A stretch of 64,000 nt of DNA, taken from the NCBI GenBank assembly GCA_021613535.1, contig CP075497.1:9734001-9798000 (forward strand), in the 5' to 3' direction. The position numbers and the translations under genes are program-made. The stretch comes from Adineta vaga (lineage: Eukaryota > Animalia > Rotifera). The notes beneath the pieces are model-generated. The model saw only the letters and a list, made by a program, of their open reading frames with translations. It did no database searches and was not told the DNA's origin. Shown here in pieces: positions 55,935 to 63,253 of the stretch. How positions within the stretch are numbered: the first letter of the stretch is position 1; every line of letters starts with the position of its first letter.

Positions 55935-56447
55935 ATGAAAGCAATAATAATTCTTTTTATCATTATTCCTCGCAGTATATTTGCTGTGGTCAATGTGATT
56001 ATTGATTCACGATCTCCGTGTGAATCAGTCGTTGATTGTTTATCATCGAATCAGTCAACAACAATTTGCTATCATGGTCAATGTGTTCCATGTCGTCAAT
56101 CAAGTGAATCATGTTCAAGTGCAGTTCACTGTTGTAGTGGTTCACGGTGTTATCGTCATCGATGTACACCACTCTATAAAACTGGACAAACATGTCGTAT
56201 ACATCGTGAATGTTTCGATACCGATGATTTTTGTATCGATCGAATTTGTACACGATGTATCTCTTTATATTCGTCGTGTTCAACAAATCCTCTATCAACA
56301 CCTTGTTGTGTAGGAAAAGGAATATGTCGTTTTGGTATTTGTCAACCAGCATATAGACATACACAAACTTGTGTAAATACATTCGATTGTGCCGATGAAC
56401 TCGTATGTTTAGCCGGCGTGTGTCAAGATCCTCTAGGTGGTTGTTGA
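55935..56447 (+). CDS. Secreted cysteine-rich repeat protein (25 Cys), single exon
   Basis: Signal peptide MKAIIILFIIIPRSIFA followed by regularly spaced Cys modules; AATAAA downstream near 56514. Confidence 0.85.
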   Translation: MKAIIILFIIIPRSIFAVVNVIIDSRSPCESVVDCLSSNQSTTICYHGQCVPCRQSSESCSSAVHCCSGSRCYRHRCTPLYKTGQTCRIHRECFDTDDFCIDRICTRCISLYSSCSTNPLSTPCCVGKGICRFGICQPAYRHTQTCVNTFDCADELVCLAGVCQDPLGGC

Positions 56448-56946: not shown

Positions 56947-57809
56947 ATGTTCGCAGTTGTTCAACGTCTTATCGATTGGTTTAGAAGTTTATTTTGGAAA
57001 GAAGAAATGGAATTAACACTTGTTGGATTACAAAATTCTGGTAAAACAACATTTGTTAATCTTATTGCATCAGGTCAATATTCGGAAGATATGATACCAA
57101 CAGTCGGATTTAATATGAGAAAAATTACGAAAGGAAATGTTACAATCAAAGTAAATATTTTAAAATGTTCATAGAATAAAAACAAAGTAATTGTTCTCTT
57201 TATTCAATTTGATTTAGATTTGGGATATCGGTAGGTAATAATGTTTGTTCGATCTTGATGATTGATTATTTTTGATTATAGGTGGTCAACCTCGTTTTCG
57301 TAGTATGTGGGAACGTTATTGTCGTGGTGTAAATGCAATTGTGTATGTATAATGAAAAGGCTTTCTTTTTATTCCATTGATAAATTTTCTGATGGAATTA
57401 GATTTATGGTTGATGCAGCTGATCATGAAAAACTCGATGCAGCTAAACAAGAATTTAGTAGTTTACTTGAAAAACCTCAACTTCAAGGTATACCAGTACT
57501 TGTACTTGGCAATAAACGTGATTTACCCAATGCACTTGAAGTTCAAGAACTTATTCAAAGATTGTAATTCTTTCATTTGTATTTCGTTTAAGAAATGAAT
57601 TCTTTTCTTTTTTCTGAAATTTAGGGATCTTTCACCGATTAAAGATCGTGAAATCTGTTGTTATTCTATATCATGCAAAGAAAAAGAAAATATTGGTAAA
57701 AAATACGATATTCAAAAGTTCATTTCTTTTCTCAATAAATCTCTTTTTTCATCTAGATATAACACTTCAATGGCTTATTCAACATTCAAAAGCAAATAAT
57801 CGTTCATAA
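56947..57809 (+). CDS. ARL8: ARF-like GTPase 8
   Basis: [77 protein letters not shown]; includes a 13-nt exon at 57218-57230. Confidence 0.97.
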
Positions 57810-58147
57810 ATCTTTTCTGGTTTTATTTTTTTAAACTTAACAAAATTTTTCTTTTCGCAACGATATTAGCTTCTATTTATTTCGAATTTGTTCATTCCAA
57901 AACTAATCATTTCTTTCTTCAAAACTTGTATAAAAAAAACAAATTTTGTCGTGCGCTTCGCTGCATTTCTTTTTTAATTGTTGTCCGTATTGGTATTTCT
58001 AACTATTCATTTATTTATTTTCGATTCTATTTAATTAAGTGAGAACAAACCAAGACCAGTGAGGAAAAAAAAGAGAATCATATATATGTATACATATTAT
58101 ACCGTAATTATTCATTTGATGATATGAGTTTCCTTTTCTTTTTCTAG

Positions 58148-58453
58148 ATGAGTACTCAACAAAATTCCAGTGTGAATAAAAAAAATGATGAAAATAAAGA
58201 TAAAACAACGAGTGGAAAAGATGAAACGGCAACAAAAGATAAAAAATTAGATATAACAAGTTTGGAAGAAGATGATGAATTCGAAGAATTTCCGGTCGAA
58301 GAATGGTCACAAGAAGATGTCGATTCGGAAGACAAACGTTTATGGGAAGAACATTGGGATGATGATGTTACAGAAACACCATTAATTGAACAATTAAAAC
58401 AAGAACTTAATAAGCATACTGCAGCTAGAACAGCAGCAACAACAGCCAAATAA
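58148..58453 (+). CDS. SEM1: 26S proteasome complex subunit SEM1/DSS1
   Basis: LEEDDEFEEFPVEEW..WEEHWDDD..QLKQEL. Confidence 0.93.
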   Translation: MSTQQNSSVNKKNDENKDKTTSGKDETATKDKKLDITSLEEDDEFEEFPVEEWSQEDVDSEDKRLWEEHWDDDVTETPLIEQLKQELNKHTAARTAATTAK

Positions 58454-58824
58454 ACTAGGATTTTTTTCTTTTATTTGTTAACTCTCCTCTTTTCTTTCTT
58501 ATGAAGTAAAACAAAAATAAAATCAAGTTCTTTTATTCCAGACTTTGTCAAAACTAGAAAAAAAGTAAGACTTTCTACTCTTCTTTTAGATTTGCACAAG
58601 AAAAATTCGATACAATTGACAGGAGAATAATGTAACTTGCTTAGCTAGAAATAATATGCATGTTTAATAAATAGTTACATGATTATTAATTGCTCTAAAC
58701 GATAATTCTTGTAAATCATACTGATTCGAGAATCTATTTATCAGCAATTATATCTAACATGTTTGATGAGTTGTCATTTCTATTATCAATCGTGGTTTAT
58801 CTTTCTTTCTTCTTTTAGATAACA

Positions 58825-60380
58825 ATGACCATACGTTTTAATCTTCTAGCTGGTTGTGAAAGTGGTATTGTAAAAGGAGTAGATACAACAAATAATGGTA
58901 TCTATGTCGTTCATAAACCAGCCGAAACTTATGCTGATGCTGTTACTCTTTTGGAATGGTCGTTAGCAAATGATGAGATCGATTATATGCAGGTAAATAA
59001 TAACAACAACGATGATTGTTTTCGTTTTATGATAGTGTATATATGCTTTTTAGGCATTTATTGCAACAAAAAAGAATAATATTTTACGTTTTAATTTTGC
59101 CAAAGAATCAATACAACAGATTGGTACCATTAATCGTTCAAGTCCATTGAAAGGTTTAGCTTATCTAGGTGAAGATAGATTTGTAACATGTTCTGAAAAT
59201 GGATCTTTATCAATCGATCGTATCAAGAACGAATCTCTTGTGTCAGAAGTATGATAACTGATTTCCTATTTCTTGAACACTTCATTTTTTTTACTTGTAG
59301 GTTGAAGCGAATGCAGGTCCAGATATCTGTCGATTACGTATTAATCCATTTAATCGAACGTTTTTCGGAACTGGTGGAAAAGAAAATGATTTGAAAATAT
59401 GGTCCATTGAAGAATTAATAAAGAACGAGAAAACAAAAAATAAATCCGTTATTTTCCAAGCAAAAAATGTAAGACAAATAAATACATATATATATACTGT
59501 GAGATATAGAGTTTGGCTTTTAATATTAGATTCGACCAAATACTGTTCGATTACGTATGCCTGTTTGGGTAACAGATTTTCAATTTATTGATGAAAGAAA
59601 TCGATGTCTTGTTGCTACTGGACATCATCAAGTAAGATTTAATCATTGAATTTGTTTTTTAATTGAAACAAATTTTTATTGATACTTAGATTCGCCTCTA
59701 TGATCCACAATCGAGTGCACGTCGACCTGTTCAAGAAATTGAATTTGAACAATGTCCAATAATGTCACTTGCATTGCTTCATTCTTCAAATAACGAGTTT
59801 GTATATTTGATATTCTATTATTATGAACGAAATTTTCCTTTCAATAGACGTTTTCTTATTGGAAATACTCAAGGTGAAATGGCTCAATTTGATCTCAAAC
59901 ATTTATCAACAATTGTTCATAAATATAGAGGTGTTATCGGTAGTATTCGTTCAATAGAAACACATCCAACATTACCATTAATTGCTTCCGCTTCAATTGA
60001 TCAATATGTTCGTATTCATCATGCAGAAACACATCATCAAGTATCAAAAGTAATTCTTATCAATTTGAAATTCTATACTATGTGTAACACTTGTTCTTGT
60101 TCTTAGTTCTTCCTAAAATCTCGTCTTACTTCGATCTTGTTTTCATCACATTCAATAGCAAGTCATGAAGAACAGGAACAACAAGTGAAAGAAGTGGTAA
60201 CGAACACAGAAGAAGTTGAAAATGATGAAGTATGGTCACAATTTAAAAGAAAATCAACAAATCCGTTCGTATATTCGTTTGAAAAAGAAAAAAAATTCAA
60301 CTCATATTTTGATTCATTTTAGATCATCAACAAAATTAAATTTGAAGAAAAAAAGAAAAACGACTGTTTTGAATGAATAA
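58825..60380 (+). CDS. WDR74: WD repeat protein 74 / Nsa1 ribosome biogenesis factor
   Basis: GCESGIVKG, FGTGGKENDLKIW, FQAKNIRP..LRMPVW, ATGHHQIRLYD..RRPV, IGNTQG, GVIGSIRS..ASASIDQYVRIH, FLKSRL. Confidence 0.9.
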
Positions 60381-60468
60381 ATAAAAAAAAATTCAATGAA
60401 TCAAACTAGTTGTTAACCTTTGTTTTGGTTTTTGTTCTTTGCATTCTTTTCTTATTTTCGAGATAAAG

Positions 60469-61124
60469 ATGTTTTCATTATTACTAAGATCTTCTTCTTT
60501 TATTATCCGTCATTTTTATCGTCACCAAATCGCACCATCCTCCACATTTTCACATATAACATCCGATGGAAATATCACGATGGTTGATATAGGTACAAAA
60601 GCCATTACACAGCGACATGCTATTGCTGAAGCTATTGTGAAATTTCCAGATTCACAAACATTTCAATCCTATTTTAATATCACCACGAAAAAAGGTGATG
60701 CACGTTTATGTTCAAAAATCGCTGGTATTCTTGCTGCTAAAGTTTGTTCAAGATTTTTCTCTTGAATCCTCAATAAAAGCTTACATCTTTATAGCGTACA
60801 GCAGATTTAATTCCACTGTGTCATCAACTTCCACTTTCACATATTGATATTGATTATGAACATCGACATGAAGAAAATGAAGTTCTTATACGATGTAGTT
60901 GTTCAACACAATATCAAACAGGTGTAGAAATGGAAGCGATGGTGGGTGTCACTATTGCTGCAGTGACTATTTATGATATGTAAGTCTTTGAAAATGAGAA
61001 TGTACTTGATAATTGTTCATGTTAACTTTTCTTCAGGTGTAAGGCTTTGAGTAAATCAATTGAAATTCGAAATATTCGTCTTGTTGAAAAAACTGGCGGA
61101 AAATCTTCTATGTCTTCGATATAA
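60469..61124 (+). CDS. moaC: Stand-alone cyclic pyranopterin monophosphate synthase (MoaC/MOCS1B-like) with a putative mitochondrial presequence, 3 exons
   Basis: FSHI..G..TMVDIGTK..T.R.A.A, KKGD..AGILAAKRTADLIPLCHQL, TGVEMEA, IYDMCKA, LVEKTGGKS. Confidence 0.92.
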
Positions 61125-61130
61125 ATCTGT

Positions 61131-61163
61131 TCGCTACTGTTTTTTTTTCTAGATAATAAAATT
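61131..61163 (+). promoter_or_regulatory. 3' splice-acceptor-like site (long T tract + CTAG, AG at 61151-61152) directly followed by AATAAA (61155-61160) between moaC and MVD
   Basis: The sequence reads long T tract + ctag|ataataaaattATG, and the 39-nt spacer leaves no room for a cis intron. Confidence 0.6.
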
Positions 61164-62255
61164 ATGTCCACCGATGCTGATTCTCGTTCAATTACATGTC
61201 AAGCTTCTCCAAATATTGCTCTCATCAAATATTGGGGTAAACGTAATGAAGAATTAATCTTACCTGACAATGATTCATTGAGTATTACTCTCGATCTAAC
61301 GGATATGCATTCATATACAACTGTTTCGACATCACCATCCATGACAAATGATACATTCTATTTCGATGGTGTTCTACAAACAAAACTTTCTAGTCGAATG
61401 CAAAAAGTTCTTGCTGAAGTTCGTCGACGTACAAAAGATGATCAAAATAAATTCGTTGAAATTCGTTCACATAATACATTTCCAGCGTCCAGTGGTTTAG
61501 CTTCGAGTGCATCTGCTTATGCAAGTTTAGCAATTGCTCTAACAAAATTATTCAATTTAGATAATCAGGATGCAACTGCTGCTTATTTAGCACGAATTGG
61601 TAGTGGTTCAGCTATACGAAGTATTTATGGAGGTTTTGTTCGTTGGTCAAGTGTAGGTGAATGTCTTTCATCATGTGTCTTTCCAATGGAGCATTGGTCA
61701 GATCTTCGATTAATAATCTTAATCTTCAATTCAAGTAAAAAACCAGTTTCATCAACTGATGCAATGCAACGTACAAGAGAAACGTCGACATTGTTTCCAG
61801 CACGTCTTGCAACTGTCAATGATAAAATTGAAAAATTGATTGAAGCAATCCAAAATAAAGATTTCAATACGTTTGCAAAGATTGTAATGATCGATAGTAG
61901 TCAATTTCATGCCGTTTGTATGGATACTTATCCTCCAGTGATTTATTTAAATGAACAATCAAAACATTTAATTGATCTTGTTCATGCTTATAATAAAACT
62001 GGCGACAATGGTGCAATGAAAGTTGCGTATACTTTCGATGCTGGACCAAATCCATTTTGTTTCATTCGCGAAGAACATGTTCAAGAATTTCTAAAATTAC
62101 TTAAATATATTTATCCAACAACGGATACTAATGTTCATAAACAAGTAGCGGATAGTGATGAAAAATTTCCTTCGATTAATGTATCAATTATGTCGAATGT
62201 TCTCGAACGAATTGTACTGACAAAAATTGGTTCTGGCCCGAAAATAATTTCATAA
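61164..62255 (+). CDS. MVD: Diphosphomevalonate decarboxylase, intronless
   Basis: NIALIKYWGKR, SGLASSAS, RIGSGSAIRS, QFHAVCMDTYPP, KVAYTFDAGPN. Confidence 0.96.
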   Translation: MSTDADSRSITCQASPNIALIKYWGKRNEELILPDNDSLSITLDLTDMHSYTTVSTSPSMTNDTFYFDGVLQTKLSSRMQKVLAEVRRRTKDDQNKFVEIRSHNTFPASSGLASSASAYASLAIALTKLFNLDNQDATAAYLARIGSGSAIRSIYGGFVRWSSVGECLSSCVFPMEHWSDLRLIILIFNSSKKPVSSTDAMQRTRETSTLFPARLATVNDKIEKLIEAIQNKDFNTFAKIVMIDSSQFHAVCMDTYPPVIYLNEQSKHLIDLVHAYNKTGDNGAMKVAYTFDAGPNPFCFIREEHVQEFLKLLKYIYPTTDTNVHKQVADSDEKFPSINVSIMSNVLERIVLTKIGSGPKIIS

Positions 62256-62373
62256 TGACTTTTGTTATTTTCTGTTTTTGATTAGAAAAATAGTCTTTCA
62301 TGATCGTTGATAACAATTAGATGTGATTAGTTCATTTAGGCATTCTTTTTAAAAAATCTTAATCTCTTTTTAG

Positions 62374-63095
62374 ATGATGATATCTAATAATTATCTATTT
62401 TCCAGTTTATTAATATCTGCCTTATTTTATATCAGCCATGCATTTACTTTTCCAGTAAATAGGATGTATTTGTATGAAATGAATTGTACTTTTTCTTTTT
62501 CATTTAAAATAGAAATTTCTGGATTTAAATTTGGCATGGAGAAATTGTGGACCTAGTTCAGATCCAATTCAATTAAAAAGTCTTTCGATTACACCTGATC
62601 CAATTCGTATACCAGGTAACGAGACAGATATTCTTAAAATCAATGGTATAAATTCTGGTTCATATAGGAGGTCTTAATATTACTGGTTCAGCTGATGTTA
62701 CAGTGCAAATTCCAGCAGATGTTTCTGTATTGTTTTATCTTCTCTCGATTCTCGTCTCATAATGATAATGTAACTTTGTTTAGGTATCTGTTACACTCGA
62801 ACGTAAAGTTGGACCATTTTTTGTCAAAGTTCCATGTGTTGATAATTTTGGTTCATGTAAATATGGAAATGCTTGTGAATTATGGGCAGAATTTTGTCCA
62901 AAGTATGCGGCACAATATGGCCTTCCATGTCAATGTCCTATTCCGGCGAATACATATTCCGTACAAAATGCAAATATAGTTGTTGATAAAAATGTTCCAG
63001 CAGAATTACTCGGTGAATATCGCGCTACTGTTGATATTGTCTCAAGTCAAAATCATCTTGGCTGTGTTTTTATTGATTTAACAGTCAAGAAATAA
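62374..63095 (+). CDS. GM2A: GM2 ganglioside activator-like ML-domain lipid-binding protein, 4 exons
   Basis: Signal peptide, WRNCG..DPIQLKSLSITPDPIRIPG, KVPCVDNFGSCKY, GLPCQCP, GEYR, HLGC. Confidence 0.88.
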
Positions 63096-63253
63096 TCAAA
63101 AGAATTCATTGCTCATTTCATCTATTTATTTGACATTCATCACTATTTTTCTCATCATTTTTTTCATCTGATTTTTTATTTTGTTTAATATTTTATTCAG
63201 CATAAGAAGAAAAAGCAATATTTAACTTTCTTTCAAATTTGTAACGAAAAAGA

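What the first reader, a model, noticed from the sequence alone, without database searches (positions are those of the whole stretch)
58825..63095. Candidate eukaryotic operon: WDR74-moaC-MVD-GM2A resolved by SL trans-splicing
Seen: four functionally unrelated genes lie on the + strand with stop-to-start gaps of only 88 nt (60381-60468), 39 nt (61125-61163) and 118 nt (62256-62373). Each ATG is preceded within 0-11 nt by a pyrimidine tract and AG: tcttttag|ataacaATG, ttttcgag|ataaagATG (weak), T tract + ctag|ataataaaattATG, ctcttttttag|ATG. The WDR74-moaC spacer has AATAAA at the WDR74 stop followed by a U-rich tract. Known: spliced-leader trans-splicing occurs in bdelloid rotifers, and nematode operons use short U-rich spacers ending in a trans-splice acceptor. 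Inference: the spacers look too short to hold a 3' UTR, promoter and 5' UTR, so the genes may be co-transcribed and cut apart by trans-splicing.
Basis: partly seen in the sequence, partly recalled or inferred. Interest (0 to 1): 0.8.

Follow-up and report, generated by a model that had tools for sequence, protein, structure and literature searches.

The report
Spliced-leader operon in a bdelloid rotifer
Four unrelated housekeeping genes (probably six) lie head to tail in a bdelloid rotifer and appear to be read as one RNA that the rotifer spliced leader cuts apart, a sea-squirt-like arrangement that the papers I could search do not document for rotifers.

Summary
Observation confirmed; interpretation mostly supported. 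The genome looks like Adineta vaga. WDR74, moaC, MVD and GM2A are intact, with gaps of 88, 39 and 118 nt, each start codon behind a pyrimidine tract and AG|AT. RNA contigs show the 3' end of the rotifer spliced leader (SL) joined at the WDR74 acceptor. A poly(A) tail of MVD sits on the GM2A acceptor AG with no AATAAA, and moaC RNA runs into the MVD acceptor tract. Spliced contigs bridge all three gaps. This is the zero-spacer layout of Ciona operons; only the WDR74|moaC junction looks nematode-like. Order and acceptors are kept in three other named bdelloids. Not shown: SL on moaC, MVD or GM2A, single molecules spanning genes, and promoter positions (contigs only, one run per key end). A 2021 paper says operons were unreported in rotifers. 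This scan has noted at least nine similar clusters elsewhere in this genome (unchecked notes), so this is one more case.

The parts
56947..57809 (+). ARL8 (Arf-like GTPase 8), 187 aa, six exons; probable first gene of the array, weak acceptor before its ATG
   Evidence: PDB ARL8A E 4e-34; introns in RNA contigs; frame; 7 of 13 pyrimidines at its best upstream AG
58088..58147 (+). 60-nt cis intron joining the region behind ARL8 to the SEM1 ATG; its AG abuts the ATG
   Evidence: joint 58087 to 58148 in runs X1, X17, X5; acceptor conserved in four species, donor not
58148..58453 (+). SEM1/DSS1, 101 aa, no intron in the coding part
   Evidence: Pfam PF05160 E 5e-15
58516..58521 (+). conserved AATAAA in the SEM1 3' UTR
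   Evidence: alignment of three Adineta, Rotaria; contigs of X1 and X6 both stop at 58553
58570..58589 (+). orphan acceptor (pyrimidine tract, TAG|AT) with no gene behind it; a SEM1 poly(A) tail sits on it
   Evidence: 18 loose A behind 58590 in X5; conserved in A. ricciae, A. steineri and Rotaria
58590..58818 (+). 229-nt stretch without RNA contigs (outron, promoter or relay leader), six upstream ATGs, ending in the WDR74 trans-splice acceptor
   Evidence: depth arithmetic; ATG list; SL joined after 58818 in X5
58825..60380 (+). WDR74/Nsa1-like WD40 protein, 385 aa, eight exons; SL trans-spliced
60381..60468 (+). 88-nt spacer: AATAAA at the stop, conserved TGTTAA and U-rich tract, acceptor AG at 60461-62
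   Evidence: bridged in X17 and X5, uncovered between 60391 and 60463 in X1
60469..61124 (+). stand-alone moaC (MOCS1B-type cPMP synthase), 181 aa, three exons
   Evidence: Pfam PF01967; introns; frame
61125..61163 (+). 39-nt spacer; moaC 3' UTR runs into the T tract of the MVD acceptor (AG at 61151-52)
   Evidence: moaC contigs end at 61147 (X1) and 61160 (X5); spacer 38-52 nt in relatives
61164..62255 (+). MVD, diphosphomevalonate decarboxylase, 363 aa, intronless, animal type, single copy
62256..62373 (+). 118-nt spacer = MVD 3' UTR; poly(A) sits on the GM2A acceptor AG (62372-73); no AATAAA or ATTAAA within 60 nt
   Evidence: 8 loose A behind 62374 in X5; hexamer scan
62374..63095 (+). GM2-activator-like ML-domain protein, 184 aa, four exons (62374-62454, 62513-62615, 62668-62726, 62784-63095); last gene before a convergent ZIP transporter

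Best explanation
WDR74, moaC, MVD and GM2A are transcribed as one precursor from a promoter upstream of WDR74 and separated by trans-splicing of the 23-nt rotifer SL onto the unpaired acceptors in front of each start codon. At MVD|GM2A, and probably moaC|MVD, there is no intercistronic DNA. The same cut that puts the SL on the downstream gene frees the upstream RNA ending in the acceptor's AG, which is then polyadenylated without an AATAAA signal (Ciona type). At WDR74|moaC a conserved AATAAA probably directs an ordinary 3' cut some 50-60 nt before the acceptor. ARL8 and SEM1 are bridged in the same way and may belong to the same unit (about even odds). Shown: SL on WDR74, poly(A) on two acceptor AGs, RNA across the spacers, conservation. 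Inferred: one promoter, SL on the three downstream genes, and the splicing cut as the source of the 3' ends.
For:: nine non-genomic letters plus the AG match the last 11 nt of the published rotifer SL (PMC3795323 Table 1) at 58817-18 in X5; the X17 contig stops at the same base with nine unaligned letters; 54 genomic SL-exon/GT donor copies against 2 in the control; poly(A) directly behind acceptor AGs at 62373 and 58589; such AGs are 5 of 1111 spacer positions, so two of two is about 1e-4 allowing a one-base slip. One 3178-nt spliced contig (X17) spans all four genes, another (X5) spans WDR74-moaC, and a second species has MVD and the spliced ML gene on one contig (L026). No contig lies in 58591-58816 in any run, which argues against genomic DNA as the bridge. 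Order and AG|AT acceptors are kept in A. ricciae, A. steineri and Rotaria magnacalcarata (20 of 20 downstream acceptors with at least 10 of 13 pyrimidines; the first gene has 7-10). Ciona operons show the same poly(A)-on-AG ends without AATAAA (PMC1488885).
Against: The only SL seen is on WDR74, which may be the first gene; none was seen at moaC, MVD or GM2A (assemblers clip short tips where a through path exists, so this is weak). Data are assembled contigs, not reads: a contig across genes is not one molecule, strand is unknown, and the RNA nature of the runs is the tool's guess (they are spliced). Each poly(A) end comes from one run (X5), the MVD one at depth about 6. The SEM1 acceptor is used in cis, so AG|ATG alone does not prove trans-splicing. 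The neighbourhood is compact anyway (158 nt between the GM2A and ZIP stops). No promoter data.
Confidence: 0.72

Rival explanations
1. Independent, tightly packed genes: each has its own promoter hidden inside the upstream gene, its short outron is replaced by the SL, and bridging contigs come from overlapping UTRs and read-through. The poly(A)-on-AG ends would then be released outrons tailed for decay.
For: SL on monocistronic genes is the documented use in rotifers (PMC7986045); WDR74 has a 229-nt RNA-free stretch in front that could hold a promoter; contig depths differ between genes; conserved AATAAA at the WDR74 stop.
Against: The SEM1 tail on the AG belongs to one contig that carries the whole coding region at depth 415 (X5), not a short outron; three nested promoters would have to persist inside coding exons across two families of bdelloids; spacers stay at 38-52 nt for moaC|MVD.
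Confidence: 0.18
2. The genes are co-transcribed but not resolved by SL at the inner junctions: stable spliced multi-gene mRNAs or alternative polyadenylation give the products, and the inner AGs are cis acceptors or relics.
For: Fully spliced contigs span two to four genes (X17, X5, L026); the SEM1 AG is used in cis; no SL seen at the inner acceptors.
Against: In X1 the moaC contig starts at 60464, two bases after the acceptor, and separate gene-sized contigs exist; no cis joint feeds the three inner acceptors; downstream frames could not be translated by cap scanning; poly(A) on the AG points to a cut at the acceptor.
Confidence: 0.07
3. Artefact: the bridges come from genomic DNA in the libraries or graph joins, and the tails on AG are chance or mispriming.
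For: Run types are guessed; contigs are graph products; one run gives both tails.
Against: Introns are absent from the contigs and 58591-58816 is uncovered in all four runs; the DNA behind both AGs has no A run; acceptors are conserved across species independently of any RNA data.
Confidence: 0.03

Closest known systems
Ciona intestinalis SL-resolved operons (Satou et al. 2006, PMC1488885)
   Same: Unrelated genes head to tail; upstream poly(A) directly on the downstream acceptor AG; no AATAAA within 40 nt; one SL serving all genes; unresolved dicistronic RNA detectable.
   Different: Ciona operons are mostly dicistronic and nearly all junctions lack a spacer; here four to six genes, with at least one junction (WDR74|moaC) keeping a conserved AATAAA and U-rich piece, plus an acceptor with no gene behind it. 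Different phylum and SL sequence.
Caenorhabditis elegans SL2 operons and the minor SL1-type operons (as described in PMC1488885)
   Same: WDR74|moaC has a poly(A) signal, a U-rich tract and an acceptor about 80 nt later, like SL2 junctions; zero-spacer junctions resemble SL1-type operons.
   Different: No second, operon-specific SL was seen (only one SL end was searched for); the spacer is shorter than the usual 100 nt; SL1-type operons keep AATAAA upstream, MVD|GM2A does not.
Chaetognath (Paraspadella gotoi) operons (PMC12460157)
   Same: Closest relatives of rotifers with described operons; housekeeping genes under 250 bp apart; no operon-specific leader.
   Different: Different SL sequences; junction structure not compared here. 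That paper lists rotifers in one general sentence on trans-splicing and operonic transcription, without rotifer operon data in the passages read.
Monocistronic SL trans-splicing in bdelloid rotifers (SL in PMC3795323)
   Same: Same 23-nt SL, seen here on WDR74.
   Different: Operons and polycistronic mRNAs were stated to be unreported in rotifers as of 2021 (PMC7986045).

Membership tests
SL-resolved eukaryotic operon | Co-oriented genes with very short gaps | tested here: met
   88, 39, 118 nt; conserved
SL-resolved eukaryotic operon | Genome encodes an SL RNA and uses it at this locus | tested here: met
   54 SL exon/GT copies; SL end joined to WDR74
SL-resolved eukaryotic operon | SL joined to every downstream cistron | tested here: inconclusive
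   Not seen at moaC, MVD, GM2A; contigs clip such tips; X1 moaC contig begins two bases after the acceptor
SL-resolved eukaryotic operon | Unpaired splice acceptor before each downstream start | tested here: met
   Conserved tract and AG|AT; no cis joint into the four acceptors in four runs; the SEM1 acceptor is an exception, used in cis
SL-resolved eukaryotic operon | Polycistronic precursor RNA | tested here: inconclusive
   Spliced contigs bridge all junctions (X17, X5, L026) but are not single molecules
SL-resolved eukaryotic operon | One promoter, none before downstream genes | not testable with these tools
   No CAGE, ATAC or chromatin data; the bacterial promoter scan is irrelevant
Ciona-type (zero-spacer) operon | Upstream poly(A) site coincides with the downstream acceptor AG | tested here: met
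   MVD|GM2A at 62373 in one run; moaC|MVD only consistent (ends 61147, 61160); not shown at WDR74|moaC
Ciona-type (zero-spacer) operon | No AATAAA within 40 nt upstream of that end | tested here: met
   None within 60 nt of 62373, 61152 or 58589; only weak TTTAAA or TATAAA variants
C. elegans SL2-type operon | Dedicated SL2 leader for downstream genes | not tested
   Only one SL ending was searched for; 5' variants exist among the genomic copies
C. elegans SL2-type operon | About 100 nt intercistronic piece between poly(A) site and acceptor | tested here: not met
   Zero at MVD|GM2A and at most a few bases at moaC|MVD; possibly 50-70 nt at WDR74|moaC only

The most novel reading that the evidence does not exclude
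All six genes ARL8 to GM2A form one bdelloid-wide operon in which trans-splicing itself makes mRNA 3' ends. The conserved gene-less acceptor behind SEM1 is a relay: SL joining there ends SEM1 and re-caps the running precursor, and a second trans-splice 229 nt later removes the leader and yields WDR74 mRNA.
Probability: 0.25. Interest if true: 0.78.

Novelty: new member of a known kind. Interest (0 to 1): 0.6.

Why it matters
SL trans-splicing has been known in rotifers since 2005, but operons were stated to be unreported there (PMC7986045), and I found no paper describing one. A conserved operon would add a phylum to the short list of animals with polycistronic transcription and show a zero-spacer design otherwise prominent in sea squirts. 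The Ciona authors left open whether trans-splicing itself makes the upstream 3' end. This locus has a cultured model species, both junction styles side by side and an acceptor with no gene behind it, so that question becomes testable. It also matters for annotation: the Didymodactylos record fuses ARL8 and SEM1 into one gene.

Tried and rejected
Horizontal origin of the intronless MVD: rejected, the nearest non-rotifer hits are animal. Homoeologous copy of the cluster: none found; SEM1, WDR74, moaC and MVD are single-copy in this assembly. Hidden RNA gene in the spacers: no Rfam match beyond one chance hit. Conserved small ORF behind the orphan acceptor: none apparent. A 3' UTR cis intron 58507-58589: conserved GT exists but no joint in four runs. 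SL on MVD in other species' contigs: none in L024-L039. A weight matrix from 17 cis acceptors was noisy, so a pyrimidine count was used instead. The bacterial promoter scan is uninformative. Literature searches and the A. vaga chromosome paper gave no rotifer operon; the library lacks most subscription papers. Spliced models were searched exon by exon by reference; no search with a joined model was run. Exons were joined only inside local scripts to check frames.
Full report
Source. The window lies on contig 6 of a 100.8-Mb, six-contig genome. MVD is 91% identical to the Adineta ricciae protein and 83% to A. steineri. Six chromosomes match the haploid A. vaga assembly (PMC8494291). The species is an inference; no tool named it.

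Genes. Exons were searched one by one. Two WD40 exons hit human WDR74 best. Pfam gives MoaC and the MVD domains, and the last exon of the fourth gene matches GM2 activator at E 2e-19. With RNA-supported introns the frames are open: WDR74 385 aa, moaC 181, MVD 363, GM2A 184. Two more co-oriented genes precede them: ARL8 (56947-57809) and SEM1 (58148-58453), with gaps of 338 and 371 nt. A convergent ZIP transporter ends 158 nt after GM2A.

Observation. Gaps of 88, 39 and 118 nt are exact. AGs end at 58818, 60462, 61152 and 62373, with 11-13 pyrimidines in 13 upstream positions, all followed by AT. Only 1.7% of ATGs in the window have such a site, and spacer shuffles give 1.6-3.4% each. The sites were chosen by eye, so conservation is the stronger test.

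Spliced leader. In run X5 the WDR74 contig begins with nine non-genomic letters, CTTACCAAG, followed by the AG at 58817-18. Together they are the last 11 nt of the published rotifer SL (PMC3795323). The X17 contig stops at the same base with nine unaligned letters that the tool did not print, so that second case is inferred. The genome holds 54 copies of this SL end followed by GT, against 2 in the control. Those read carry the whole leader, and one folds better than its shuffles (z -3.6). No SL was seen at moaC, MVD or GM2A. Assemblers drop short tips where a through path exists, so this is not evidence of absence. In X1 the moaC contig starts at 60464, two bases after its acceptor.

3' ends. 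Two poly(A) tails were caught, both in X5, and both sit directly on an acceptor-like AG: 8 loose A behind 62374 (MVD, on the GM2A acceptor, depth about 6) and 18 behind 58590 (SEM1, depth 415). The first base after each AG is a genomic A, so the site is uncertain by one base. Neither has an A run behind it or AATAAA within 60 nt. Such AGs are 5 of 1111 spacer positions, so two of two is about 1e-4. moaC contigs end at 61147 (X1) and 61160 (X5), so the moaC 3' UTR includes the pyrimidine tract of the MVD acceptor; whether the last eight letters in X5 are a tail cannot be told. At WDR74|moaC, AATAAA at the stop, TGTTAA and the U-rich tract are conserved in six lineages, and X1 leaves 60391-60463 uncovered, which fits an ordinary 3' cut upstream of the acceptor.

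Bridging RNA. One spliced 3178-nt contig in X17 runs from the WDR74 acceptor through moaC and MVD into GM2A; an X5 contig joins WDR74 and moaC. In another bdelloid, one contig carries MVD and the spliced ML gene (L026). These show RNA across the junctions, not single molecules. No contig lies in 58591-58816 in any of four runs, which argues against genomic DNA. ARL8 and SEM1 are bridged in three runs through a 60-nt cis intron ending at the SEM1 ATG. Its donor is not conserved but its acceptor is, a caution that AG|ATG can be used in cis.

Conservation. The order ARL8, SEM1, WD40, moaC, MVD, ML is kept in A. ricciae, A. steineri, Rotaria magnacalcarata and a metagenome lineage. The moaC|MVD gap is 39, 51, 40 and 38 nt, and all 20 downstream acceptors in four species are pyrimidine-rich AG|AT, while the first gene scores 7-10 of 13. 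Didymodactylos keeps ARL8, SEM1, WDR74, the first moaC exon and MVD in order, with a tract and AG|AT before MVD. There the rest of moaC was not found, MVD lies about 1.7 kb further on and no GM2A follows. The acceptor behind SEM1 is conserved in three Adineta and Rotaria with no gene behind it. It lies about 70 nt after the AATAAA, close to the spacing at WDR74|moaC.

Mechanism. Most likely (0.72) one precursor is resolved by the single SL. At zero-spacer junctions the second splicing step frees the upstream RNA ending in AG, which is tailed; Satou et al. proposed this for Ciona and noted that it needs debranching or makes the two products mutually exclusive (PMC1488885). That step is inferred here. 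Whether WDR74 has its own promoter in the 229-nt gap or is reached from ARL8 through the orphan acceptor is open. The main rival (0.18) is nested promoters with outrons and read-through.

Comparison and novelty. It works like a Ciona operon, with one nematode-like junction. Membership is met on spacing, acceptors, SL use at the locus and poly(A) on the AG; it is inconclusive on SL at downstream genes and on a single precursor, and untestable here for promoters. It is not an SL2-type operon. Operons were stated to be unreported in rotifers in 2021 (PMC7986045); a 2025 chaetognath paper names rotifers only in a general sentence; my searches found no description, but the library lacks most subscription papers. 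My reading was fixed before I looked at earlier notes of this scan. These list at least nine similar clusters in this genome; they are unchecked and not counted as support.

Limits. One lay of contigs from four runs, ending at 62800; each key end rests on one run. 

Noticed in passing
L001-L012; G000 contigs 1-6: SL RNA genes mostly occur as divergent head-to-head pairs about 168 bp apart, dispersed and clustered on contig 5; the 5' letters of the leader vary between copies.
   Followed up: partly
window 58570-58589: Conserved splice acceptor with no gene behind it, carrying a SEM1 poly(A) tail; a second SEM1 end near 58550 is suggested by two contigs stopping at 58553.
   Followed up: partly
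window 60469-61124; G000:C2:14409259-14409687: moaC stands alone here while a moaA-type domain (PF06463) lies on another chromosome; from my own knowledge the two share one bicistronic MOCS1 locus in humans.
   Followed up: partly
window 57218-57230: 13-nt micro-exon in ARL8, supported by RNA contigs in all four runs.
   Followed up: yes
window 63185-63200: A pyrimidine-rich CAG about 105 nt after the GM2A stop recurs in A. ricciae and Rotaria, and no AATAAA is seen in this 3' UTR; it may be another AG-type end. It lay outside the stretch laid with RNA.
   Followed up: no
G000:C6:9804038-9804343 (L022): Second GM2A-like gene (55% identical in the last exon) about 7 kb downstream, beyond the ZIP genes; also present in A. 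ricciae and A. steineri.
   Followed up: no
window 55935-56447: Cysteine-rich, apparently secreted 170-aa protein with a DUF7107 match, co-oriented 500 nt before ARL8 and kept in two other Adineta.
   Followed up: no
L107 1-5082: The Didymodactylos annotation fuses ARL8 and SEM1 into one 397-aa gene and omits the WD40 gene, probably a gene-calling error caused by tight packing.
   Followed up: partly
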